From the IMG/VR virus record IMGVR_UViG_3300032675_000001, positions 62,001 to 126,000 of that record: a DNA stretch of 64,000 bases; one strand, 5' to 3'. The notes under the pieces are model-generated. The model was not told the origin of the DNA. It ran no database searches and was given only the letters and a program-made list of their open reading frames with translations. This document shows, piece after piece, positions 17,534 through 52,799 of this stretch; position 1 is the first letter of the stretch, and every line of letters begins with the position of its first letter. The position numbers were made by a program, and so were the translations under genes.

Positions 17534-18658
17534 TTAGTCTCTATCAAGTCCCACATACTCATGAGAAAAGCAAACACGCTTGATGTGCTTATCTTTATGG
17601 TTCTTTTCCTTGACGGCGCGGTTGGTTATATAATCTTTTCTACCCTTACCGTTCTTTGACGTTCCTCTCCACCGTGGGGAAGAGTTTCTGTATTCACCCA
17701 AACGTGGATGTGCAGTTTTAGAAAAAAACCTACAACCTCTTGCTAAGAAGATTTCACCAATCGCATCACTTAAACGGGTTCCAAATCCAAGACCCTGATA
17801 CTCTGGTAGAATAACGGTTCTATGACCTCTCCATGCATTCTTGAAGTTGCCATTTGGAAATGGAAGAGCAGCAGAAAATCCTACTATTTCACCATCCCAA
17901 ATAGCTAACCAGCATTGTGCAGTTCTATTAAGGTTTCCGTCAAGATAGTGATGGTGGCGGAAGATTGGCCAAACTTCGGTTGAACAAGGTATGATTTCCA
18001 GTTTGATTTCAGGTCTTGGCCGAAGTGACCCCCTTCCGGTCATCTGACCGGTCATAGTGTCATATACCCAATCGGGCTGTAACCATTCAATCACATCATA
18101 ATGGCATGTTGCGAGAACAATGTTCTTTAGGTTATGTTTGTCAACATATCTACGAATGGCAACAGAACACGATTTAGCTACATTCCTGTCAATAACAGAT
18201 GTGAACTCATCAAATACCATACCTGACACCAATGACCTTGCGAGATTAGCGCGAAACTGTTCTCCATTTGAAAGAACATGATATGGCCTGAGCCAAGATG
18301 GAATGGTGTTTAATCCCACAGCAGACAGTCGTTCTGCAGCTTGATCTGCCGATTCAAAGTGTGAGCAGATTGCTTTAGTTTCATCCCATTCAGGTTGTTC
18401 AGTAGAACCAAACGATTTCAGCAGAGATGACTTACCTGATCCAGATGGACCAACAATCAACCCGATACCATAATCTTCCGGAATACTTGGAACATTTGGA
18501 ACAGTAAATGTGGTAGTCCCGTTGAACTCATAGTCAAACATAGATGATACTGCTTTAGTGATATCATCTTGAAATACAGATACCGATATATCTCTACTCG
18601 GTATCTTATCGTTCTCAAACTCAAATAGAGATGCTATACTATCGTGCATATTATTCAT
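17534..18658 (-). CDS. ABC-type ATPase fused to GNAT acetyltransferase
   Basis: GPSGSGKS, LSNGEQFR, DEFTS and TCHYD; C-terminal R.VILPEYQGLGFG acetyl-CoA motif. Confidence 0.88.
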   Translation of the reverse strand: MNNMHDSIASLFEFENDKIPSRDISVSVFQDDITKAVSSMFDYEFNGTTTFTVPNVPSIPEDYGIGLIVGPSGSGKSSLLKSFGSTEQPEWDETKAICSHFESADQAAERLSAVGLNTIPSWLRPYHVLSNGEQFRANLARSLVSGMVFDEFTSVIDRNVAKSCSVAIRRYVDKHNLKNIVLATCHYDVIEWLQPDWVYDTMTGQMTGRGSLRPRPEIKLEIIPCSTEVWPIFRHHHYLDGNLNRTAQCWLAIWDGEIVGFSAALPFPNGNFKNAWRGHRTVILPEYQGLGFGTRLSDAIGEIFLARGCRFFSKTAHPRLGEYRNSSPRWRGTSKNGKGRKDYITNRAVKEKNHKDKHIKRVCFSHEYVGLDRD

Positions 18659-19001
18659 CTGCTATTTCAAACAGGTCCCCATATGGGTTCTGTTCTTTTT
18701 CGTATTGCTCTTTTGCATTCTGAATACGTGCTTGTGAAATCTTGATATAATCTGGATCAAGATCAATGCCAATATAGTTGAAGCCTTCAAGCATCGCAGC
18801 CTTACCTGTTGAACCAGAACCATTGAATGGATCAAGAACAGTCCCACCCTTTGGTGTTACTAAACGACACAGATACTTCATCAAGTCAGTTGGTTTTACC
18901 GCCTACGTGGGGTGAGTATTTAAATACTCACCCCGAACCTCCTTTACATATATCTTCAACTCATTTGGTAGCGAGTCGAAGTCTTTCTTTGATAATTCCA
19001 T
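18651..19001 (-). CDS. C-terminal fragment of the N6/N4 DNA methyltransferase, with an in-frame TAG at 18903..18905
   Basis: MELSKKDFDSLPNELKIYVKEVRGEYLNTHPT*AVKPTDLMKYLCRLVTPKGGTVLDPFNGSGSTG... carries the SAM-binding DPFxGSG motif that 19712..22267 lacks. Confidence 0.8.
18909..18934. repeat. Perfect 26-bp palindrome
   Basis: GGGGTGAGTATTTAAATACTCACCCC. Confidence 0.95.
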
Positions 19002-19734
19002 TGTTATTTTTCATTTCCTCTATGACTTCATGCTCCCAGAATCTCAAAACAGTAAATCCACATTTCCTCAAATATGCATCTTGTGATTTGTCTAAGTTCA
19101 TTCTTTTTTGCTGCCTAAGGTCCGGAATTCCATTTTTCAATTTTGATGGATGTCCGTGCCAGTAATCACCATCCCATTGAATGATGATTTTTTTATCCGG
19201 TATTAGAACGTCAACTGATATTTTGTCTGCTATTAGTATTTGTTCTTCAAATATAATATCCTCGTTCAATAATATCTGCCTTCCGAGTAACTCTAATTTG
19301 TTTGGTCCTTTTTTTCTATTCTGTGCCATGTTTCCATTAGTAGATGCTCTCCTGATCCATTCTTCATCTGTATTTCTGCATTCTATGGTGCAGTAAGTTG
19401 GGTTATTATCTTTCAGTCGGCTTTTACTCCAATAGAAAGTATTATGACACATTTTACATTCAAATGCAACTTTATTTTTTGCCTGAAAATCATTAGCACA
19501 CTTATGACTGCAGAAATGATTAGCATGTGCCTCTAATGTCGCCAGACTCCTATACACTTGATTACCACACATAGCACATTCAACGATTCGTCCAGTTTTT
19601 CTTTGTGGTTTAGGGCTGGTCCTGCTACAATATGCACTGCAATATTGCCTATTTGCTGGCATATCTGCAGTATGAGGTTTTCCGCATCCCTTACATATTA
19701 TCGTTCTCGTTTTATATTTGTTTTTTCTGTACAT
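18961..19734 (-). mobile_element. Free-standing Vsr/DUF559-like endonuclease with N-terminal zinc-ribbon repeats, inserted in the methyltransferase gene
   Basis: Three CxxC...YCS/FCS/YCT..C units; VD..I...IIIQWDGDYWH and D....D..L...G.TVLRFWE motifs. Confidence 0.85.
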
Positions 19735-22267
19735 TTAATACTCCATTACTTTCGTTTGAAGTATTTATATGTTTTTTGATTTTTTCAATAATATCTGGTG
19801 GCGTATTTTCATCAATCAGATAACGCGAAACTTTATCCAATCCGCTGTTACGATCTGATCTGCTGGCTTTAGCAGCATAATACATTCTCTGAACATTCTC
19901 ATAATCCAGTGTGTCTTCCTCTGTGAATTCACAAGACTTAAAAAATCTTGCTGCTGATCCTGTGTCGCCTCGTTTCGCTGATGGAACTCTTTGATATTCA
20001 CCATAACAGTTGGTATTATCATCTCCTGTATGTGATGGTTCTGTTCCCTTTACATCGCCTTGTTGACCCTTACTTTCAGGAAACAATGCGACAACTTCAT
20101 CACTGCCATCATGAATGATATTAGCGGGGAATCTTCCTTTTAGTTCTGGTCGGTCAAACTCAGTTCTAGGTCTATGATCAGATTTTCTATAGTAACAGTT
20201 TGTGCAAATATCTTGATCTTCTTCTACTGGATTTAGTGTATCAGGAGCATAATCATCGCATCCCATATATTCCGAAGAGCCAGCAAGTGATCCTGACTTC
20301 GCCGTGCATTTTCCTTGCGGCGTTGCACTTAGCTTATCCTCTTCCGACATATAATCAACCCGACAATCATCAATATTGATTCCACCAGTTCCATGCTTTA
20401 GAACATTCTTCGCTACAGTCTTTTCAGATAGTGGCTTCCTAGCAACGCAAATAGGCTCCCACGCTGGCTTCAGTGCCGTGCCCCAGCCATCCCATTGTTT
20501 TGCTTCTTCTGTTGCTGGTGCAGTAACGTCCCAAGTTTCATAAACAGTTGTTCCACCAACAGTTGGCAATGCGGATTTTCCACTAGTGCTTCTAGCTTTA
20601 ATCTGCTGACCAATTACCCTTCGTTCAATATTATTATAAATGCCGGTCAATCTTTCAGAAGTTTCTTCATCCGGATTGAGCACTTCCTTCATGCGTTTCC
20701 ATTTTTCCTGTGGTGGCAACAAATTAACCCATGGGTCAAACTTTTTTCCATCTGCTGGTAGTGTTAGATAGTTACTTGCTCTGAACCCACACTCAGTGTC
20801 AATCTGCTTTCGCGTTTTCCCACTTTTTTTAAATATATTAGTCAGGATATTCTTTAGTTCAATTACTTCTTCATCATCGGCAGGATTTTCCATATGCTTA
20901 TCAATAGCCTTACCGATGTTCATAGACTTAGGAAAGCCAGAGTTTCCAGTAGTGAATGCTTTACCATCCCTTACTGCGACGAATGCGCCAGTAGGAACCT
21001 TAACACACCAAATCTTACCTTCATATTCAATCGGAGTTACAGTTGCCAGAGTGGTTTTATGTCCTTTCCAGCCTCGTATAACTTGTGATCCGAGTTGTTG
21101 GCAAATAACATCAGATTCTCCGCCCGATTGTCCAATGGATCGTGGTTTATATGATGCACTACTTCCGTGCGAGTAAGCATTCTGTTTAAATGCTTCGCTA
21201 CTATTAGACGGTGCTCCATGACATACCCGTCTCTCCTCGCCATAGGCAGGAAGTCCACTGGACAACGAACATACTTCGCTCCTTTGTAGTTTCCATGTGA
21301 GCGACGGTATGTTACTCCACCCTTCCAAGCAGGGTTGGTTTCTCCAGTCATGCGGTCCACCAAATCTTGTTCCGACTTCTCGGACCAGTTGGCTCTCCCC
21401 TTGTGTGCGTGAGCTTTCCATTCTATTCCCCGCAAAACTCCGTTGCATGTTTTTGAACACACAGGAGTTTTCACTCGTTGTAAATGTTTTATATTTCTGT
21501 AGAACGTTATCCCACATACTTGACAAGTATGTTGTTGTTTTCCAATATGTTCGTTTATAGGTGGCGATCCAGTATTGGAACGACCTATTGACTTGTTGGA
21601 ACATTGTTTGCTGCAAGTTTTGTTTCTTATAGCCTGTTCTTTGGTATGAGTCTGATAAGGATTGTTGCAAACCAGACAGGTTTTCCAAAAAGGGTATATT
21701 CTCTTGCGAACTAAGTTCTTCTGCAAAAGCGAATATTTCTCTTCCGCCTCGTTCAACAATGCAACGATGGTTTCGGCTGACGATTTGGTCTGTATGATCA
21801 GATTGTATTCTGTAAGCGGTATCCTTGATGTCATATTCATAAACTTCCTCAACTGGCATATAACTATATGTTTGAGTATATTTATCATAACACAAGACTA
21901 AATCGTTTGGTTTTATTGCTGTGTATGGTTTTATGCCGTTTGGCGTCACAATCTCTGTGTCATCAGATAGACAGCCATAGACCCACCCAATCTGATCGCG
22001 AATATCAAATCCAGCGTCTTCAATCGCTACCACCATTCTATGATATGTGCGAGTACCAGAGAATGCCAACAGGTGTCCGCCTGGCTTCAATACACGCATC
22101 ACCTCTGACCACATCTCAACACTATATGCGATGCCAGAACTGTCCCACGACTTACCCATGAAACCAAGTTCATATGGCGGATCAGTTACCACAGAATCAA
22201 CAGAGTTTTCTTCCATGGTTTTTAATACGTCAACACAGTTGCCGTTATGTAATACAAAGCTACTCAT
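19712..22267 (-). CDS. N6-adenine/N4-cytosine DNA methyltransferase (beta-type motif order), N-terminal fragment, intein-containing
   Basis: DPPY, W.YG|SGFPKS after intein removal, LKPAWEPI..ARKP, GRFPAN, SAARFF and AKASRSDRN motifs. Confidence 0.92.
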   Translation of the reverse strand: MSSFVLHNGNCVDVLKTMEENSVDSVVTDPPYELGFMGKSWDSSGIAYSVEMWSEVMRVLKPGGHLLAFSGTRTYHRMVVAIEDAGFDIRDQIGWVYGCLSDDTEIVTPNGIKPYTAIKPNDLVLCYDKYTQTYSYMPVEEVYEYDIKDTAYRIQSDHTDQIVSRNHRCIVERGGREIFAFAEELSSQENIPFLENLSGLQQSLSDSYQRTGYKKQNLQQTMFQQVNRSFQYWIATYKRTYWKTTTYLSSMWDNVLQKYKTFTTSENSCVFKNMQRSFAGNRMESSRTQGESQLVREVGTRFGGPHDWRNQPCLEGWSNIPSLTWKLQRSEVCSLSSGLPAYGEERRVCHGAPSNSSEAFKQNAYSHGSSASYKPRSIGQSGGESDVICQQLGSQVIRGWKGHKTTLATVTPIEYEGKIWCVKVPTGAFVAVRDGKAFTTGNSGFPKSMNIGKAIDKHMENPADDEEVIELKNILTNIFKKSGKTRKQIDTECGFRASNYLTLPADGKKFDPWVNLLPPQEKWKRMKEVLNPDEETSERLTGIYNNIERRVIGQQIKARSTSGKSALPTVGGTTVYETWDVTAPATEEAKQWDGWGTALKPAWEPICVARKPLSEKTVAKNVLKHGTGGINIDDCRVDYMSEEDKLSATPQGKCTAKSGSLAGSSEYMGCDDYAPDTLNPVEEDQDICTNCYYRKSDHRPRTEFDRPELKGRFPANIIHDGSDEVVALFPESKGQQGDVKGTEPSHTGDDNTNCYGEYQRVPSAKRGDTGSAARFFKSCEFTEEDTLDYENVQRMYYAAKASRSDRNSGLDKVSRYLIDENTPPDIIEKIKKHINTSNESNGVLNVQKKQI
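19732..19769 (-). promoter_or_regulatory. TATAAATA late promoter plus RBS-sequestering hairpin for the Vsr-like endonuclease
   Basis: TATAAATA at 19762..19769. AATACTTCA pairs with TGGAGTATT, which contains the GGAG RBS. Confidence 0.7.
20942..21973 (-). mobile_element. Intein (344 aa) in the DNA methyltransferase
   Basis: Begins CLSDDTEIVT; block B SRNHR; block F/G YEGKIWCVKVPTGAFVAVRDGKAFTTGN followed by Ser. Removal restores YG-SGFPKS. Confidence 0.93.
21037..21840 (-). CDS. HNH homing endonuclease encoded in the +1 frame inside the intein
   Basis: CxxC zinc repeats, NPAWKGG, and GYVMEHRLIVAKHL...EVVHHINHDPLDNRAENL. GAGGA RBS 5 nt before ATG 21840; ATAAATA at 21879..21885. Confidence 0.9.
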   Translation of the reverse strand: MNMTSRIPLTEYNLIIQTKSSAETIVALLNEAEEKYSLLQKNLVRKRIYPFWKTCLVCNNPYQTHTKEQAIRNKTCSKQCSNKSIGRSNTGSPPINEHIGKQQHTCQVCGITFYRNIKHLQRVKTPVCSKTCNGVLRGIEWKAHAHKGRANWSEKSEQDLVDRMTGETNPAWKGGVTYRRSHGNYKGAKYVRCPVDFLPMARRDGYVMEHRLIVAKHLNRMLTRTEVVHHINHDPLDNRAENLMLFANNSDHKLYEAGKDIKPLWQL

Positions 22268-23166: not shown

Positions 23167-26100
23167 TTAAAGTTGCTCAAAACGCTCACGAAGCCATGCC
23201 CATTCGTAACTTAGCTTCAGCTTATCAAACTCACCGTTTACATCGTCATAGTATTCATCAGCGTCTAATGCACCCTTGATACTATATTCCGAGAACTCCC
23301 CTTGACCCTTGTTTAACCATGCTTCCAGCCTTTCTCGCGAAATGTCAGTATCATCAGCCTTTAGCTTCAACACTTCACGAAATGCCGTTCTCCACGTGGA
23401 GAATGGATCGGTATTGTACTGTGCAATACCTGATAGCAGTGGCACTACTTCATGTTCATCATCCAACGTAAAGTCAAGCCCATTTCCTACATTAGCTAAT
23501 GTAAGTTTCTTATTGTAACAAATGAGGCCCTGGTGGCCGTATATCAAACCATTTACTGGATTTTTGGCATGGAAAATATAATGCTTCGGAACCTGCATTC
23601 TATCTGGTTGCCAGTTGAAGTCAAACTTTAAACTGACTTTCAGCTTAGCAAATACAGTAAAGCACCATGGAGTGTCACTTGCCTCAACGGCGGCATGATA
23701 CGCGGCTACACGACCATTTACACCATCAACTCTAACAACACGATTCTTCAAGTTTTTGGTTGCTTGAAGTAGATGTTCCCAGTTTTCTTCTGCACCAGTT
23801 TCACCATTGCTCAAATATACAATGTCCAGTGGCCTTGACATCGCAAGTTTAGGTGCACGTTTGATGTAAGGATAGTCATACAGTTCCTTCTTAACGTGAT
23901 CCTTTACTTCCTTGGGAACAGTGATTCGGGTTGCGCCCGTGCTGGTGATAATGATATTCTTGTTCTCTGGTGCCCACAAGCACATAGGCTCAACATCTTG
24001 AACATTGACGCTAGCATTATCTTCCGTAATGATGGTAGCATATGGAAAACCATCAACCTTTTTAATGGCATTAACATGCGTATCATCGCTTGTAACGATG
24101 ATTGGCTCCGGAAGTCTATTGGTCTTGATGGTCCCATTGTAGTTTACCTTATGGTAATCTTCCAACACTTGCATATCGTCAATGATTTCACGAGTCTTGT
24201 TTACGTCAATAAAAAATGTATCGCCAAACTTAAGCTTACCGCTCGGGAAGACATGAAGATGATCACGAGCAAATGGATCAACCGTATATGAGAAATCAAA
24301 GTTGGAATAATCACATACGCTACTGCATATCCAAAGATAATGCTCTTTCTTCTGATGCTGCCTAGAGATAATATTTCTCAACGTGTTAAGATAGCTTTCG
24401 TCATACGGAATAGTGGTTACATGTTTTCCGCTTGCTTTGCTTTTTAATAGTTCAACTACCTTTTCCGTTTCTTTATTACCATGATCAATAACCACAATGT
24501 CATGGACACACTGTGTTGCAGTTGCACGAATGTTCTTGACAAAGTTGAGGTTACTTAGATGCTCAATGATCTTAATCCACTTGGTATCTTCGCCAAATGT
24601 CTCACGGTTAACCAAGAATGTGCTACCCCAATGTGACCACTGAGTTCCGAACACATGGACCATTTTCATCTGCCATGGGTTAGGATAATATTCAAAGTCA
24701 AAATTGGTGTAATCCAGTTCTGAGTTTAGTACCCAAAACAGATCGGTAGTAGATCGGTTGGAACACCGATTTATAGTATCAACCCAAGAGTTAAGATAAC
24801 GTGTCTTTTGTATGTTAGGGTACTTTGCCTTTAACTCGTCAAATCTTGCAAGAGACTCTGGGTTGCCCTTATCAACATAGAACATATCAGACTTTTTGAA
24901 TAACTTAAACAATGTTTTGTCATCAAGCTTTTCATCAACTACCCAATTGATTTCTCTGTGGCCCTTTAACCACATATTGGCATTGATCAAGTATGTCTGT
25001 GTCAACTCACTGTCAGATGATCCAAATGCATGAACATACTCTGCTTGTTCAATGGTCGGTCTCCATGAGAAATCAAAATCAGTGTAATCAAGATCAGAAT
25101 TTAGTGCCCAAAAAATCTCACCATGGTGTTCTTCAACAAGATCACTCAGAGTGGTCTTAACGTAATACCGAGGGTAATCAGAAACCACATTCTCATCAAT
25201 ACTAAGCCATTCCATTTTAACGATTTCACCGTTTGTATTTGGCGAAACATATCGTGGACCATCTTCTGGATTTTCAATGGTTCCAAACTGATAGATATAT
25301 GGAGGAGACAACTCATCAGGATGCCATGAAAAGTCAAACGTGTCAACATTTATTCCATCAGGAATGACCCAGTTTTCTTTTGATGGAAGACGCATTGCCG
25401 TTGGATTCCCAACATAAAAGTTATCTGTTGCGCCCGGAACAATATACATTGGACCACCGGTTTTCTGATGCTGAGTACCGAAGATGTAGATATATGGATC
25501 ATTGGTATCATCAGGATGCCATGAATAATCAAAATCTCCGATTACTGTTGGATCGGTAATGGTCCATTTAGACTTGTCTGGTTTACGAATGGCTTTAATG
25601 ATACGAGTATCAATATACTTTAACGGAGAACTTTCTGTTGCACCCGGAGCAATATATCTTGGACCGCCTGTCTTTTGCCACTGAGTTCCGAACTGATAGA
25701 TATATGGCTGATCGTCCAAATATGGATGCCAAGAGAAATCAAATGCATCAACATCAATCTCATCGGGATTGTATTCCCAGTTGTCTCTATTAGGAAGCAC
25801 TTTGGCAGTTTGACATTCTTCATACTTGACTGCGACACCACCCGGAACAGTATATGTAGGACCACCAGTCAATGCCCACTGTGTAGGGAACTGATAGATA
25901 TAGGGTGGTGCAGTATCATCAGGATGCCAAGAAAAGTCAAAACCTTCCATGTCCACATTATCCGGAATGGTCCAGTTTTTCATGCTTGGATGACGAATGG
26001 CTTTCACATCATCAACATATTTTACTTCAGTGGCATTAGGCATTACATAACGTGGACCGCCTGTCTTCTGCCACTGAGTTCCAAACTGATAGATATATTT

Positions 26101-28104
26101 TGGCTCACCGGGATTTGGCTTCCAAGAGAAATCAAACTTGCTAGCATCAATGTTGTCTGGAACTTCCCAGTACTGCATATCATTATCAAGAGTTGCAATA
26201 ACATCTGTAACATACTTGACCTGAGTTGCACCTTCCACTCTATATTCAATAGTCGGCATTACTTCTGCTGGATGCCACTGATTACCAAACACATAGATAT
26301 ATGGTTCATCAGTTTCATCAGGATGCCATGACCAATCAAAGTCTTTTATTTTCAGATTTCTCAGAATAGTAAAATTTTGTTCATTTGGCAAACGAGTTGC
26401 CTTGATGATAGATGTATCAATATACTTGACGGGGCTGTTCTTATCGCAACCGGGCGTCATATATGTGGGGCCACCGGTTTTTTGATGCTGAGTCCCAAAT
26501 TTATAGATATATGGTTGATCTTCCGCATATGGGTGCCACGAGAAATCAAACGTTGATTCGTCAATAAGTTCATGATCATAAACCCAGTTTGTTTTGTCAG
26601 GCATTGCTATAGCAACCTGACCCTCTACGTACTGAACTTTTATGGCACCGGGAACGGTGTAGACAGGACCTCCACTAAATGCCCATTGAGTACCAAACAC
26701 GTAAATATAATCAGGGCTAGTAGCATCTGGATGCCAAGAGAAATCAAAACCGTTAACGTCCACGCTTTGAGGGGATGTCCAATGCTCCATGCTAGGCAGT
26801 CTTTTAACTTTTTGTACATCAACATATTTTCTTTCTGTTGCACCCGGAACAATATACATTGGTCCACCGGTTTTCTGCCATTGCGTCCCGAACTCATAGA
26901 TGTAGGGAGGATCGTGTGGATTTGGTTCCCATGAGTAGTCAAAACCCCTATCATCAACGTTATCAGGGATAATCCAGTTTGTCAAGCTTGGATTACGTGT
27001 GGCACGTTCATCCATATATTTGTATTCAGTGGCACCTTCTACCACATATTGAATTGATACCTTGTCTTCTGGCTTGTTCCATTGATTGCCCCAAGCATAT
27101 ATATACGGCGGGGATGTTGGATCAGGAACCCAGCTATAATCAATACCATATGAGTCTTCCAAGTGTTGAAAATTATTGGGCTGAGGCAGCAACTTTGCTG
27201 AACTTGGTATATGCTTTTCATCTATTGCACCTTCCATAAGATACCGAATTGTAGGCATCTTTGTGCTATCATACTGATTGTTACCAAATACATAATTTAG
27301 AGTTGGTTCACGTGGATCAGGTCTCCATGAGAAATCAAAACTGTTTATGTCAATAGGATATAATATTTCCCACTTATTCCATTCAGGTAGAACCGGAATC
27401 TTTTCTGGCATATATTTTTTATCAGTTGCTCCGGGGGCATGATACTCTAACGTGGACTTGAGGGTGCCCTCAATATACTTGTTTCCCCATATATAAATGA
27501 AGGGAGGGTCCATAGGATCAGGACGCCAAGACATATCAAATCTTGACTTATCAACTTCCTGAACTTCTACCCAACAATCATTGGGTAATAGTTCAACAAT
27601 GTTGTTCATATACTTCACGTTCACAGCACCGGGAACATGATACTCTAAAACAGACTTAATCTGTACGGGGAAGTATTTGCATCCCCACTTATAGATATAA
27701 GGAGGGTCAGATGGATCAGGGTGCCACGAGAAATCAAACTTGGTATGATCTACGGTGTCAAGTTCAACCCAGCAATCGTTGCTAAGGTTTCTGCGTTTTA
27801 CCGGATCAACATCGGAGCGATATATGATGACATCGCTATGTTCTTTGGGGCAAAGCCAAGTTCCAGAATCCTTTTGATGTTGGCTTGGCCACACATTATT
27901 ATGTTCTTCCGCCCACACATCTTCATCGGGAAGGAACTCAAAGTCAAAGTCCCAGTCAAACCCACGATAGTCACAGAACTCATTAATGATCCAGAAATGT
28001 TCAGTCGTTGACTGGCTTCTGGCATCCTCTAATGATTCTGCAAACTTTTCTCTTGGGTGAACGTTTGGTTTTTTACCGTAATAAAAAACATCTCTAATTG
28101 CCAT
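23167..28104 (-). CDS. 1645-aa protein: 13 tandem FDFSWHPD repeats plus several glycosyltransferase-A-like modules
   Basis: Repeat consensus FDFSWHPDxxxPPYIYxFGTQWQKTGGPxYxVPGAxxxKY. The last module aligns by eye with 51179..52126. Confidence 0.85.
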   Translation of the reverse strand: MAIRDVFYYGKKPNVHPREKFAESLEDARSQSTTEHFWIINEFCDYRGFDWDFDFEFLPDEDVWAEEHNNVWPSQHQKDSGTWLCPKEHSDVIIYRSDVDPVKRRNLSNDCWVELDTVDHTKFDFSWHPDPSDPPYIYKWGCKYFPVQIKSVLEYHVPGAVNVKYMNNIVELLPNDCWVEVQEVDKSRFDMSWRPDPMDPPFIYIWGNKYIEGTLKSTLEYHAPGATDKKYMPEKIPVLPEWNKWEILYPIDINSFDFSWRPDPREPTLNYVFGNNQYDSTKMPTIRYLMEGAIDEKHIPSSAKLLPQPNNFQHLEDSYGIDYSWVPDPTSPPYIYAWGNQWNKPEDKVSIQYVVEGATEYKYMDERATRNPSLTNWIIPDNVDDRGFDYSWEPNPHDPPYIYEFGTQWQKTGGPMYIVPGATERKYVDVQKVKRLPSMEHWTSPQSVDVNGFDFSWHPDATSPDYIYVFGTQWAFSGGPVYTVPGAIKVQYVEGQVAIAMPDKTNWVYDHELIDESTFDFSWHPYAEDQPYIYKFGTQHQKTGGPTYMTPGCDKNSPVKYIDTSIIKATRLPNEQNFTILRNLKIKDFDWSWHPDETDEPYIYVFGNQWHPAEVMPTIEYRVEGATQVKYVTDVIATLDNDMQYWEVPDNIDASKFDFSWKPNPGEPKYIYQFGTQWQKTGGPRYVMPNATEVKYVDDVKAIRHPSMKNWTIPDNVDMEGFDFSWHPDDTAPPYIYQFPTQWALTGGPTYTVPGGVAVKYEECQTAKVLPNRDNWEYNPDEIDVDAFDFSWHPYLDDQPYIYQFGTQWQKTGGPRYIAPGATESSPLKYIDTRIIKAIRKPDKSKWTITDPTVIGDFDYSWHPDDTNDPYIYIFGTQHQKTGGPMYIVPGATDNFYVGNPTAMRLPSKENWVIPDGINVDTFDFSWHPDELSPPYIYQFGTIENPEDGPRYVSPNTNGEIVKMEWLSIDENVVSDYPRYYVKTTLSDLVEEHHGEIFWALNSDLDYTDFDFSWRPTIEQAEYVHAFGSSDSELTQTYLINANMWLKGHREINWVVDEKLDDKTLFKLFKKSDMFYVDKGNPESLARFDELKAKYPNIQKTRYLNSWVDTINRCSNRSTTDLFWVLNSELDYTNFDFEYYPNPWQMKMVHVFGTQWSHWGSTFLVNRETFGEDTKWIKIIEHLSNLNFVKNIRATATQCVHDIVVIDHGNKETEKVVELLKSKASGKHVTTIPYDESYLNTLRNIISRQHQKKEHYLWICSSVCDYSNFDFSYTVDPFARDHLHVFPSGKLKFGDTFFIDVNKTREIIDDMQVLEDYHKVNYNGTIKTNRLPEPIIVTSDDTHVNAIKKVDGFPYATIITEDNASVNVQDVEPMCLWAPENKNIIITSTGATRITVPKEVKDHVKKELYDYPYIKRAPKLAMSRPLDIVYLSNGETGAEENWEHLLQATKNLKNRVVRVDGVNGRVAAYHAAVEASDTPWCFTVFAKLKVSLKFDFNWQPDRMQVPKHYIFHAKNPVNGLIYGHQGLICYNKKLTLANVGNGLDFTLDDEHEVVPLLSGIAQYNTDPFSTWRTAFREVLKLKADDTDISRERLEAWLNKGQGEFSEYSIKGALDADEYYDDVNGEFDKLKLSYEWAWLRERFEQL
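25230..27790 (-). repeat. 13 degenerate ~60-codon coding repeats; boundaries approximate
   Basis: Recurring (+)-strand words such as ggatgcca.gagaaatcaaa and ccaccggtttt; the protein repeat was counted by eye. Confidence 0.85.
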
Positions 28105-28136: not shown

Positions 28137-28229
28137 TTATTTTATATACCTACACGGGTCTTTAGTAGTCTTACCAAGATACATCAATCCGGTTTTGTTA
28201 TGGGTTTTCTTGTACAAATAAATAATCAT
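28137..28229 (-). pseudogene. Truncated GIY-YIG-like (Seg-like) endonuclease remnant
   Basis: MIIYLYKKTHNKTGLMYLGKTTKDPCRYIK*: the YLY...YLG motif, then a stop after 30 aa. Confidence 0.7.
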
Positions 28230-28296
28230 ATGCTGATGCTCCTTAATAGCGTTAGAGTGAGTGGGGGCGCAATCCCGCGACTCACAACTATTTATA
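28227..28296 (-). promoter_or_regulatory. Late promoter + conserved structured leader, copy B
   Basis: TATAAATA gtt GTGAGT cgc GGGATTGCGCCCC c ACTCAC tctaac GCT attaagg AGC atcagcat ATG. Confidence 0.8.
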
Positions 28297-50577: not shown

Positions 50578-50594
50578 GGGCTTCTTTTCTGATG

Positions 50595-50662
50595 ATAAAT
50601 AGCTGTGAGTCGCGGAACAGACATTCCCACTCACTCTAACGCTATTAAGGAGCATCAGCATG
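50595..50662 (+). promoter_or_regulatory. Late promoter + conserved structured leader, copy A
   Basis: ATAAATA gct GTGAGT cgc GGAA cagaca TTCC c ACTCAC tctaac GCT attaagg AGC atcagc ATG. Confidence 0.8.
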
Positions 50663-52713: not shown

Positions 52714-52779
52714 ACTGATGCTCTCCCAAGCGTTAGAGTAGTTGGGGATTCCAGTCCCGCGAACTACATCTTTATTTAT
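52711..52779 (-). promoter_or_regulatory. Late promoter + conserved structured leader, copy C
   Basis: ATAAATA aagat GTAGTT cgc GGGA ctggaa TCCC c AACTAC tctaac GCTT ggga GAGC atcagt ATG. Confidence 0.8.
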
Positions 52780-52799
52780 GTCTGACATCAACTATTTCA

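What the first reader, a model, noticed from the sequence alone, without database searches (positions are those of the whole stretch)
20942..21973. Intein whose homing endonuclease is a separate overprinted gene in the +1 frame, with promoter and RBS hidden in intein codons
Seen: the 344-aa intein has intact splicing blocks but no nuclease motif in its own frame; its middle reads like off-frame sequence. The +1 frame (21840..21037, 267 aa) is a complete zinc-finger/HNH nuclease, so about 800 nt are stop-free in two frames, including intein block B. A late-promoter motif ATAAATA (21879..21885) is spelled by intein D-K-Y codons, and the GAGGA RBS by E-E codons. Inference: splicing and homing are decoupled, so the nuclease is made late and independently of the host protein. 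I recall out-of-frame nucleases being reported for some actinobacteriophage inteins (unverified here), so the architecture may not be wholly new, but the embedded expression signals are notable.
Basis: partly seen in the sequence, partly recalled or inferred. Interest (0 to 1): 0.85.

Follow-up and report, generated by a model that had tools for sequence, protein, structure and literature searches.

The report
Methylase intein with overprinted HNH nuclease

Summary
Window 20942..21973 (-) is a 344-aa class-1 intein inserted at GWVYG|SGFPKS of an N6_N4 DNA methylase. ORF 21840..21037 (-), in the +1 frame, encodes a 267-aa nuclease with two zinc fingers and an HNH domain. The intein frame has 0 stops across the HNH codons, against about 28 expected (P about 6e-13).

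It is not a sequencing artefact. The same +1 arrangement occurs in 70 of the 71 intein loci from IMG/VR that I classified (one of them the window's own contig), in the huge phage LR756508.1 and in an Azotobacter vinelandii prophage. HNH identity across these falls to about 40%. The nuclease is never in frame with the intein.

Selection acts on the HNH frame in the centre and on the intein frame at the two ends. The centre of the intein-frame product is predicted to be disordered.

A start ATG is conserved. The Shine-Dalgarno (SD) motif is present in only about half of the relatives. The ATAAATA motif is associated with gene starts in this window, but it is shared only with the closest relative, and "late" timing is untested.

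Out-of-frame intein nucleases and an intein-less out-of-frame HNH in the same methylase family were published in 2025-2026. I therefore file this as a new, very abundant member of a known kind.

Separately, the same gene is split downstream by a second nuclease cassette whose junction looks like a short translational hop.

The parts
19712..22267 (-). Precursor ORF (851 aa) for the N-terminal piece of the N6_N4 DNA methylase, including the intein
   Evidence: ORF list. Pfam PF01555, E 7.8e-10. Homologous methylases in phages.
21974..22267 (-). N-extein (98 aa), ending ...GWVYG
   Evidence: The boundary is the same in 24 aligned loci. Intein-less alleles read YGSGFPKS.
20942..21973 (-). Class-1 intein, 344 aa: Cys1 ... 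Gly-Asn344, followed by Ser+1
   Evidence: Invariant C1, H69 and N344. The profile hits the solved intein 6zgq at E 3.5e-9. The AF2 model plus Foldseek matches many inteins and Hint domains. Mycobacteriophages Bobi and Lilac carry a homologous intein at the same site.
21683..21973 (-). N-terminal splicing region (residues 1-97; block A CLSDDTEI, block B SRNH with His69 at 21769..21767)
   Evidence: pLDDT above 90. Conserved in 22 sequences. Intein-frame amino-acid identity is 67% in the part overlapped by the HNH start.
21077..21682 (-). Intein-frame spacer (residues about 98-299): stop-free but otherwise unconstrained read-through of the HNH gene
   Evidence: pLDDT below 50 for residues 110-295. 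Amino-acid identity is 29%, equal to the non-coding third frame. No Pfam hit.
20942..21076 (-). C-terminal splicing region (blocks F/G, ...WCVKVPTGAFVAVRDGKAFTTGN)
   Evidence: pLDDT 88-96. Nearly invariant across loci.
21037..21840 (-). Overprinted +1 ORF: a 267-aa nuclease with two zinc fingers and an HNH domain (alternative start ATG 21834; stop TAA 21039..21037)
   Evidence: Pfam HNH_3. 820 homologues in the protein search. Eight invariant Cys and H229/H230/N238/N242/H252. AF2 mean pLDDT 87. The third codon position is the most variable.
21832..21840 (-). Two candidate start codons, ATG-AAT-ATG. The second (21834) aligns with the ATG conserved in relatives.
   Evidence: 36 of 57 loci have an ATG at this exact position, and 56 of 57 have an ATG in the open +1 stretch.
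21846..21850 (-). GAGGA, a Shine-Dalgarno-like motif 5 nt upstream of ATG 21840, spelled by intein codons Glu-Glu
   Evidence: Sequence. SD-like motifs occur in about half of the relatives.
21879..21886 (-). GATAAATA, a candidate promoter-like motif 38 nt upstream of ATG 21840, spelled by Asp-Lys-Tyr codons
   Evidence: The 7-mer is associated with gene starts in the window. The intein copy is shared only with L005.
19713..20941 (-). C-extein part of the N-terminal methylase piece. It ends in a cassette-derived tail after ...RNSGLD.
   Evidence: Comparison with uninterrupted homologues.
18961..19734 (-). Second, free-standing nuclease gene (DUF559/Vsr-like, N-terminal zinc fingers) that splits the methylase gene. 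This is context, not part of the intein.
   Evidence: Pfam DUF559. TATAAATA lies 28 nt upstream of its ATG. The methylase motif-I piece follows at 18651..18902.

Best explanation
The window carries a bona fide class-1 intein at the GWVYG|SGFPKS site of a phage N6_N4 DNA methylase. The region where an intein usually holds its endonuclease is instead occupied by an independent gene for a zinc-finger/HNH nuclease, read in the +1 frame.

**Shown**
- Ribosomes translating the methylase would read through about 200 codons of stop-free, unconstrained and probably disordered spacer.
- The conserved N-terminal (about 97 aa) and C-terminal (about 45 aa) halves form a Hint domain with Cys1, the block-B His, the terminal Asn and Ser+1 all intact.
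- The HNH ORF has a conserved ATG start and is under purifying selection in its own frame.
- The intein frame is kept open by never placing T at HNH third codon positions before AA/AG/GA codons.

**Inferred**
- The Hint domain excises the whole insert and religates the methylase.
- The nuclease is made by internal initiation at ATG 21840 or 21834. The template is either the methylase mRNA (using the GAGGA motif) or a transcript from an internal GATAAATA promoter-like motif.
- The nuclease cuts intein-less methylase alleles, so that repair copies intein plus nuclease into them (homing).
- The arrangement arose when a free-standing HNH gene replaced or invaded the endonuclease region of a pre-existing methylase intein. 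Relatives of that intein in mycobacteriophages still carry an in-frame LAGLIDADG domain.
For: - **Dual-frame openness far beyond chance.** 0 stops observed against 28 expected, P about 6e-13. 0 of 76 at-risk third positions are T.
- **Same +1 layout in relatives.** 24 aligned viral loci have 0 intein-frame stops, against 3-20 expected from permuting each ORF's own synonymous codons. 70 of 71 classified IMG/VR loci of this intein family, one of them the window's own contig, have the HNH in +1 and never in frame. LR756508.1 and an Azotobacter vinelandii prophage show the same layout.
- **Frame-specific selection.** In the centre, nucleotide diversity at HNH codon positions 1/2/3 is 0.378/0.322/0.579. 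Amino-acid identity there is 54% in the HNH frame and 29% in the intein frame, equal to the third frame. In the block-B overlap, identity is 67% in the intein frame.
- **Intein identity.** Invariant C1, H69 and N344. PDB intein hit at 3.5e-9. AF2 gives pLDDT above 88 for residues 1-105 and 300-344 and below 50 for 110-295. Foldseek matches inteins and Hint domains at probability 1.0. Bobi gp73 and Lilac gp101 carry a homologous intein at the identical site with an in-frame LAGLIDADG.
- **HNH identity.** Pfam HNH_3, conserved zinc-finger Cys and His/Asn/His residues, AF2 pLDDT 87.
- **Start codon.** 56 of 57 loci have an ATG in the open +1 stretch.
- **Mobility.** HNH identity tracks the splicing domain (r 0.79) rather than the extein (r 0.45). 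For L006 against L007, the N-extein is 61% identical but the intein is 94% and the HNH 91%.
Against: - No expression, splicing or cleavage data exist. Everything rests on sequence and models.
- The penultimate intein residue is Gly, not the usual His.
- Whole-model Foldseek of the HNH protein gave no significant PDB match, so the nuclease call rests on Pfam and conserved residues.
- SD-like motifs are absent upstream of the ATG in about half of the relatives.
- The promoter-like motif is not conserved beyond L005.
- The host methylase in this phage is also split downstream by a second nuclease cassette, so its activity is not assured.
- The first 40 HNH codons show no clear selection in the HNH frame beyond what the intein frame imposes: 59% identity against 55% for the third frame.
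Confidence: 0.85

Rival explanations
1. Artefact or decay: two compensating indels, either sequencing errors or recent mutations, moved an originally in-frame HNH domain out of the intein frame. On this reading the +1 ORF is not a separate gene.
For: The HNH ORF ends exactly where the C-terminal splicing region begins, as an in-frame domain would.
Against: The +1 offset and full openness of both frames recur in 70 of 71 classified loci, with HNH identity falling to about 40% and locus GC of 33-68%. No locus has the HNH in frame. Two contigs carry the identical sequence. Stop avoidance in the intein frame requires long-term selection.
Confidence: 0.01
2. The nuclease is not initiated independently. 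Instead it is made by programmed +1 ribosomal frameshifting from the intein frame, giving a fusion of N-extein, N-terminal intein and HNH.
For: In the window the +1 frame is open for 19 codons upstream of ATG 21840. SD-like motifs are missing before the ATG in about half of the relatives.
Against: An ATG is conserved at a homologous position in nearly all loci. In L016 and L022 the +1 frame opens only one codon before that ATG. I noticed no shared slippery motif in the start-region sequences listed, though I made no dedicated search. Such a fusion would terminate before the C-extein and waste the host protein.
Confidence: 0.05
3. The insert does not splice. Like the ShiLan domain, it stays in the methylase as a tolerated loop, and only the HNH gene matters.
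For: The same HNH lineage occurs without any intein, inserted out of frame in a variable loop of related methylases (group B loci; Mantra gp64; PMC11855218). The penultimate His is missing.
Against: Splicing residues and blocks A, B, F and G are strongly conserved across 22 sequences while the middle is free to vary. The confident Hint fold matches solved inteins. The insert sits inside a highly conserved methylase motif rather than a loop.
Confidence: 0.05
4. The HNH protein is not a homing enzyme. It has another role tied to the methylase, such as a restriction-like partner or a DNA-packaging HNH.
For: The HNH lineage is found with this methylase family in two different insertion contexts.
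Against: Its similarity pattern follows the intein and not the extein, and close intein/HNH pairs sit in divergent methylases. Shortened derivatives with partial HNH ORFs exist, as expected for a homing cycle (L137, L140, L130-133). Free-standing relatives are ordinary phage HNH genes.
Confidence: 0.05

Closest known systems
Mycobacteriophage N6_N4 methylase inteins (DNMT inteins of Kelley et al. 2016, PMC5050341; e.g. Bobi gp73, Lilac gp101)
   Same: Same host protein family, identical insertion site (WxYG|SGFPKS) and clearly homologous splicing blocks, including the unusual ...TGN C-terminus.
   Different: They carry an in-frame LAGLIDADG endonuclease domain. The window's intein instead has a disordered spacer in frame and an HNH gene in the +1 frame.
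ShiLan domain: an out-of-frame 'hidden' HNH inserted in mycobacteriophage methylases (Arsenault, Gosselin & Gogarten 2025, PMC11855218)
   Same: The same methylase family carries an out-of-frame zinc-finger/HNH ORF and stays stop-free in the host frame. The HNH is homologous: 32% identity to the Mantra gp64 insert, E 7e-10.
   Different: The ShiLan insert has no splicing blocks and sits at another site, in a variable loop further downstream. The window's HNH lies inside a complete intein. Seven environmental loci in my set (group B) are of the ShiLan type.
[quoted passage not shown]
   Same: The nuclease is encoded between the splicing halves in another reading frame, and the intein-frame translation of that stretch is unstructured. 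Invasion of an intein by a free-standing nuclease gene is the proposed origin.
   Different: Different nuclease family (HNH), frame (+1 rather than frame 3 or antisense) and host protein; methylase is not among their four host proteins for non-canonical inteins. Here the nuclease ORF begins inside the splicing domain, over block B.
Cyanobacterial dnaX intein with a +2-frame LAGLIDADG (Phillips et al., bioRxiv 10.64898/2026.09.14.751524; first noted by Gorbalenya 1998, as cited there)
   Same: Same-strand overprinted nuclease, an SD-like motif before its start, and frame-dependent selection with low constraint on the intein frame in the overlap.
   Different: That case is a bacterial chromosomal gene with a LAGLIDADG nuclease in the +2 frame.
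Inteins with in-frame HNH domains (Dalgaard et al. 1997, as cited)
   Same: An HNH nuclease is associated with an intein.
   Different: In those the HNH is part of the intein polypeptide. Here it was never in frame in any of the 70 HNH-bearing loci examined.

Membership tests
Intein (class 1, Hint-domain protein-splicing element) | In-frame insertion at a conserved site of a host protein that also exists without the insert | tested here: met
   The insert lies between GWVYG and SGFPKS. Intein-less alleles read YGSGFPKS (Mantra gp64; group B loci).
Intein (class 1, Hint-domain protein-splicing element) | N-terminal Cys/Ser nucleophile, block B His, C-terminal Asn and +1 Ser/Thr/Cys | tested here: met
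   C1, H69 and N344 are invariant in 22 sequences, and Ser+1 follows the Asn in every boundary examined. The block B Thr is replaced by Ser (SRNH). The penultimate His is replaced by Gly, as in the homologous mycobacteriophage inteins.
Intein (class 1, Hint-domain protein-splicing element) | Hint fold | tested here: met
   AF2 gives pLDDT above 88 for residues 1-105 and 300-344. Foldseek matches 6zgq, 1at0, 9hth, 6frg and others at probability 1.0 and rmsd 2-3 A. Profile hit to 6zgq at E 3.5e-9.
Intein (class 1, Hint-domain protein-splicing element) | Protein-splicing activity | not testable with these tools
   Needs expression of the precursor.
HNH endonuclease (Pfam HNH_3, PF13392) | Profile match above the curated cut-off | tested here: met
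   28.7 bits against a cut-off of 24.8, E 1e-6, residues 226-264. Most homologues carry PF13392 in precomputed annotation.
HNH endonuclease (Pfam HNH_3, PF13392) | Conserved His...Asn...His catalytic residues on a beta-beta-alpha element | tested here: met
   H229, H230, N238, N242 and H252 are invariant in 33 sequences. The model has strands 227-230 and 243-246 followed by helix 249-256. Whole-model Foldseek was uninformative.
HNH endonuclease (Pfam HNH_3, PF13392) | DNA cleavage, and site specificity for the empty allele | not testable with these tools
   Needs purified protein and an intein-less target.
Non-canonical intein with out-of-frame homing endonuclease | Nuclease ORF in another frame between the splicing halves, while the host frame stays open | tested here: met
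Non-canonical intein with out-of-frame homing endonuclease | Purifying selection on the nuclease frame and relaxed constraint on the intein frame in the overlap | tested here: met
   (20 loci, 177 ungapped codons).
Non-canonical intein with out-of-frame homing endonuclease | Distribution discordant with the host gene (mobility) | tested here: met
   (pairwise identities). No formal tree-topology test was run.
ShiLan-type out-of-frame HNH insertion (no splicing element) | Absence of intein splicing blocks | tested here: not met
   The window's insert has complete splicing blocks, so it is not of this type.
T4-type late promoter | TATAAATA consensus used upstream of genes in this genome | tested here: inconclusive
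   The site reads GATAAATA. The exact 8-mer TATAAATA is not enriched. The 7-mer ATAAATA lies within 70 nt upstream of predicted starts in 10 of 20 cases, and three copies precede a shared leader. No transcript data exist, and no late sigma factor was sought.

The most novel reading that the evidence does not exclude
This locus would represent a large, so far undescribed clade of methylase inteins: at least 70 loci in IMG/VR and hundreds of 90%-identity protein clusters. Three things would have to hold.

- The nuclease has been locked in the +1 frame since the clade's origin.
- About 120 nt encode both intein block B and a folded N-terminal segment of the nuclease, which would be true dual coding.
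- In this giant phage the nuclease has its own promoter written in intein codons, so homing is timed independently of the host methylase.

A further possibility concerns the same gene's second nuclease cassette. It may restore the conserved HPTVKP motif by a 6-7 nt translational hop over a stop codon, in the manner of T4 gene 60.
Probability: 0.3. Interest if true: 0.65.

Novelty: new member of a known kind. Interest (0 to 1): 0.45.

Why it matters
- **Annotation.** Out-of-frame intein nucleases are common outside actinobacteriophages, and automatic annotation gets them wrong. In Azotobacter vinelandii the HNH is called as a separate gene and the methylase is truncated.
- **Overlapping genes.** The family is a clean natural dataset of more than 70 diverged copies. 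One frame is selected for protein function while the other is selected only to stay open.
- **Intein evolution.** The data support the "splicing element first, nuclease invades later" view, because the same splicing domain carries LAGLIDADG in frame in mycobacteriophages and HNH out of frame here.
- **Practical use.** Several cultured carriers make direct tests of dual-frame translation feasible.

Tried and rejected
- **Megablast of the locus against GenBank phages:** no match. The window is an uncultured 360-kb IMG/VR contig.
- **Pfam on the intein-frame translation:** no hit.
- **Foldseek of the whole HNH model against the PDB:** nothing significant, only weak YacG zinc-finger similarity. 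The multi-domain model has pTM 0.42.
- **PDB sequence search with the HNH profile:** only weak zinc-finger hits.
- **TATAAATA as an enriched late promoter:** rejected, 6 matches against 4.4 expected.
- **Generic sigma-70 and terminator scan around the locus:** not above shuffles.
- **PHROGs on ten large neighbouring proteins:** no T4-like hallmark, so this gave no handle on promoter type.
- **Group I intron as the cause of the second interruption:** no Rfam match in the window or in Bobi. This does not exclude an intron whose loop holds an ORF.
- **Split intein at the second interruption:** considered and rejected, because there are no Cys/Ser or Asn boundary residues.
- **Exact-motif scans of IMG/VR for the junction hairpin:** mostly chance or unrelated hits.
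Full report
**1. Observation**

The minus-strand ORF 19712..22267 (851 aa) starts as an N6_N4 DNA methylase (Pfam PF01555). After ...GWVYG it holds a 344-aa insert that begins CLSDDTEI and ends ...FTTGN. The insert is followed by SGFPKS.

The insert has no stop in its own frame. The +1 frame is open from 21897 to 21040. From ATG 21840 it encodes 267 aa with an HNH_3 domain. The third frame has 33 stops and the reverse frames have 11-15.

- ATAAATA at 21885..21879, within Asp-Lys-Tyr codons.
- GAGGA at 21850..21846, within Glu-Glu codons, 5 nt before the ATG.

**2. Is it more than chance?**

I recoded the HNH protein with the window's own codon usage. This gives a mean of 28.2 stops in the intein frame, and the minimum in 20,000 trials was 13. 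The Poisson P(0) is about 6e-13.

The mechanism is visible in the codons. A stop in the intein frame needs T at an HNH third position before a codon starting AA, AG or GA. Of the 76 such positions none is T, whereas 62 of 190 other third positions are T (p=3e-11).

**3. Is it an assembly artefact?**

No. The evidence from relatives is as follows.
- tblastn found the same arrangement in LR756508.1, a 484-kb uncultured phage. Its methylase is 783 aa, the intein sits at the same site, and a 294-aa HNH ORF lies in the +1 frame with 42% identity.
- A scan of IMG/VR with the HNH protein returned 70 loci. The window itself is IMGVR_UViG_3300032675_000001, 360,683 bp.
- In 36 loci (35 of the 70 plus LR756508.1), the frame corresponding to the intein frame is open across the whole HNH match, within ORFs of 440-1190 aa.
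- For 24 aligned loci (locus GC 33-68%) the HNH is always +1 relative to the intein. The intein frame has 0 stops, against a mean of 3-20 when each ORF's own synonymous codons are merely permuted. The third frame has 6-27 stops.
- A second scan with the intein alignment gave 78 loci. I classified 71, and 70 have the HNH in +1 and none has it in frame. Shortened inteins of 178-287 aa with partial HNH ORFs also occur.
- The protein database holds 820 homologues at 90% clustering. All thirteen that I aligned carry the N-terminal segment that overlaps intein block B.
- One homologue is in an Azotobacter vinelandii prophage. There NCBI annotates the HNH as a separate gene and truncates the methylase, yet a single ORF with the intein spans the region.
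- A scan of species-representative genomes found 19 loci, mostly metagenome-assembled contigs from many phyla. The cultured carriers are Plastorhodobacter daqingensis and a Cupriavidus strain.

**4. What the two frames encode**

*Intein frame.*
- An alignment of 22 inteins shows strong conservation of residues 1-97 and of the last 45 or so, with C1, H69 and N344 invariant. The middle is unalignable.
- The profile hits the solved AceL NrdHF intein at E 3.5e-9.
- AlphaFold2 gives pLDDT above 88 for residues 1-105 and 300-344, and below 50 for 110-295.
- Foldseek matches dozens of inteins and Hint domains.
- Mycobacteriophages Bobi (gp73) and Lilac (gp101) carry a clearly homologous intein at the identical site, with an in-frame LAGLIDADG domain. 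These are the DNMT inteins catalogued in 2016 (PMC5050341).

*HNH frame.*
- Thirty-three proteins share eight invariant cysteines, consistent with two zinc fingers.
- They also share the HNH residues H229, H230, N238, N242 and H252.
- The AF2 model has mean pLDDT 87.

**5. Selection by frame**

I used a codon alignment of 20 loci.
- In the central 177 ungapped codons, nucleotide diversity at HNH positions 1/2/3 is 0.378/0.322/0.579. Amino-acid identity is 54% in the HNH frame. In the intein frame it is 29%, the same as the non-coding third frame.
- In the first 40 HNH codons, which overlap block B, all positions are less variable. The intein frame is the better conserved there: 67% against 59%.

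So the centre is an HNH gene that must merely stay open in the intein frame. The 5' end of the HNH ORF is dominated by the intein's constraint. Whether the nuclease's first 40 residues are themselves selected is not resolved.

**6. Expression signals**

*Start codon.* An ATG lies in the open +1 stretch upstream of block B in 56 of 57 non-redundant loci. In 36 of them it is at the exact position of window ATG 21834. A subfamily starts 14-19 codons earlier. In the intein frame this ATG is formed by a Tyr codon TAT followed by a G-starting codon. Several GC-rich carriers also use TAT there.

*Shine-Dalgarno motif.* SD-like motifs precede the ATG in about half of the loci.

*Promoter claim.*
- TATAAATA is not enriched in the window.
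- Ten of the 20 copies of ATAAATA lie within 70 nt upstream of predicted gene starts in sense orientation. Position alone predicts 3.8%, and same-composition 7-mers give 11% (Fisher 4.7e-5).
- Three copies precede a shared leader of about 60 nt.
- The intein copy (GATAAATA) lies 38 nt before ATG 21840. Among relatives it is found only in L005.

I regard an internal promoter as possible, internal initiation on the methylase mRNA as equally possible, and "late" as untested.

**7. Mobility**

HNH identity correlates with the splicing domain (r 0.79) much more than with the N-extein (r 0.45). Some pairs have near-identical intein and HNH in divergent methylases. For L006 against L007 the values are 94% and 91% against 61%. 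For L018 against L020 they are 75% and 71% against 39%. Together with the truncated derivatives, this fits a homing cycle. I did not run a formal topology test.

**8. Comparison with the literature**

Out-of-frame or antisense nucleases in inteins are documented:
- Gorbalenya 1998, as cited.
- Actinobacteriophage inteins with an endonuclease VII-like ORF in frame 3, or with antisense LAGLIDADG/VSR ORFs (bioRxiv 10.1101/2025.01.02.630785).
- The cyanobacterial dnaX intein with a +2 LAGLIDADG, an SD motif and frame-dependent dN/dS (bioRxiv 10.64898/2026.09.14.751524).

The same methylase family is also known to carry an out-of-frame HNH without any intein, the ShiLan domain (PMC11855218). Mantra gp64 is an example, and its HNH is homologous to ours. 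Seven environmental loci in my set are of that intein-less type, inserted further downstream before GWGTALKP.

I found no report of an HNH overprinted inside a complete intein, nor of this methylase clade.

I therefore file the locus as a new and very abundant member of a known kind. It is not a new kind.

**9. Context seen in passing**

The methylase ORF of the window lacks the C-terminal SAM-binding motif. After ...RNSGLD it runs into a tail and stops. A DUF559/Vsr-like nuclease gene follows (18961..19734). Then comes a 32-codon ORF (19001..18903) ending ...HPT-TAG. Three bases later the frame continues AVKPTDLMKYLCRLVTP...DPFNGSGST. Uninterrupted homologues read HPTVKP at this point.

Bobi has the same three-piece layout and an identical 14-nt stretch before a covarying hairpin. 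Two further junction variants show the same layout: L175/L204, also apparently of mycobacteriophage type, and a Solirubrobacterales metagenome-assembled contig.

In all four variants, skipping 6 or 7 nt restores HPTVKP. The skipped stretch begins with the stop. It ends with a codon that shares its last two bases with the preceding Thr codon, or is itself a Thr codon. The pairs are ACG..GCG, ACC..GCC, ACC..GCC and ACT..ACC. In L020 a homologous head is fused to the C-terminal piece without any gap.

This looks like a nuclease cassette that splits the gene, as mobA splits T4 genes 39 and 60. It may come with a short translational hop. Independent initiation of the last piece is the alternative. 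In the three actinobacterial-type variants a GTG after a Shine-Dalgarno motif is in frame with the last piece. In the window it is not. This remains unresolved.

**10. Verdict**

The core interpretation is supported by comparative and structural evidence. The expression-signal part is only partly supported. The architecture is already known in kind.

Noticed in passing
window 18651..19840 (-): The same methylase gene is interrupted a second time. After ...RNSGLD the ORF runs into a 40-aa tail and stops at 19712. A DUF559/Vsr-like nuclease gene with N-terminal zinc fingers follows (18961..19734, with TATAAATA 28 nt upstream of its ATG). The methylase motif-I part (..VKPTDLMKYLCRLVTP..DPFNGSGST) resumes at 18902..18651. 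Related methylases in L020 and L022 are likewise cut into pieces by free-standing HNH genes, with similar tail and head peptides at each break.
   Followed up: partly
window 18880..19001 (-); L073 2710..2830; L175 3881..3935; L284 4020..4080: This is a candidate short translational bypass. A small ORF ends ...HPT-TAG (TAG at 18905..18903) directly after a strong hairpin (18934..18909). Six nt later (7 nt in mycobacteriophages and in a Solirubrobacterales MAG) the frame continues VKP.... Skipping the gap would restore the conserved HPTVKP. The codon before Val shares its last two bases with the Thr take-off codon or is itself a Thr codon (ACG/GCG, ACC/GCC, ACC/GCC, ACT/ACC), and the hairpin stem covaries. 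The alternative is independent initiation of the last piece: GGAGG-N6-GTG is in frame in the three actinobacterial-type variants but not in the window. No Rfam match.
   Followed up: partly
window 50594..50662 (+), 52780..52715 (-), 28296..28228 (-): Three genes share a conserved leader of about 60 nt directly after an xATAAATA motif. It contains a GTGAGT...ACTCAC hairpin and then ...CTCTAACGCT.. up to an AGCATCAG-type stretch before the ATG. This may be a repeated regulatory 5' UTR.
   Followed up: no
window, 20 copies of ATAAATA (e.g. 41823, 37250, 16394, 15812, 3237, all on the - strand): Several copies lie only 0-9 nt before an ATG with no Shine-Dalgarno motif. This suggests very short or leaderless 5' ends, or that some predicted starts are wrong. 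The motif ranks first among all 21 same-composition 7-mers for lying upstream of genes.
   Followed up: partly
L027, L028, L029, L032, L034, L036, L037 (IMG/VR loci): These are environmental methylases without the intein. They carry a homologue of the C-terminal half of the same HNH, out of frame (+1), in the variable region before GWGTALKP. This is the ShiLan-domain arrangement outside actinobacteriophages.
   Followed up: partly
L075 (Azotobacter vinelandii CP092752.2, 4117898..4126827): The public annotation calls the overprinted HNH as a stand-alone gene and starts the methylase inside the intein. A single 860-codon ORF with the intein spans the region, so this looks like a systematic mis-annotation of the architecture.
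   Followed up: yes
window 23167..28104 (-): This is a 1645-aa ORF built of many repeats of a motif of the form FDFSWHPD....PPYIY.FGTQW. I did not examine it further.
   Followed up: no
L020 5218..5664 (+): A further HNH-like ORF lies in an alternative frame inside another piece of the L020 methylase. That one gene therefore appears to host at least four nuclease genes.
   Followed up: no
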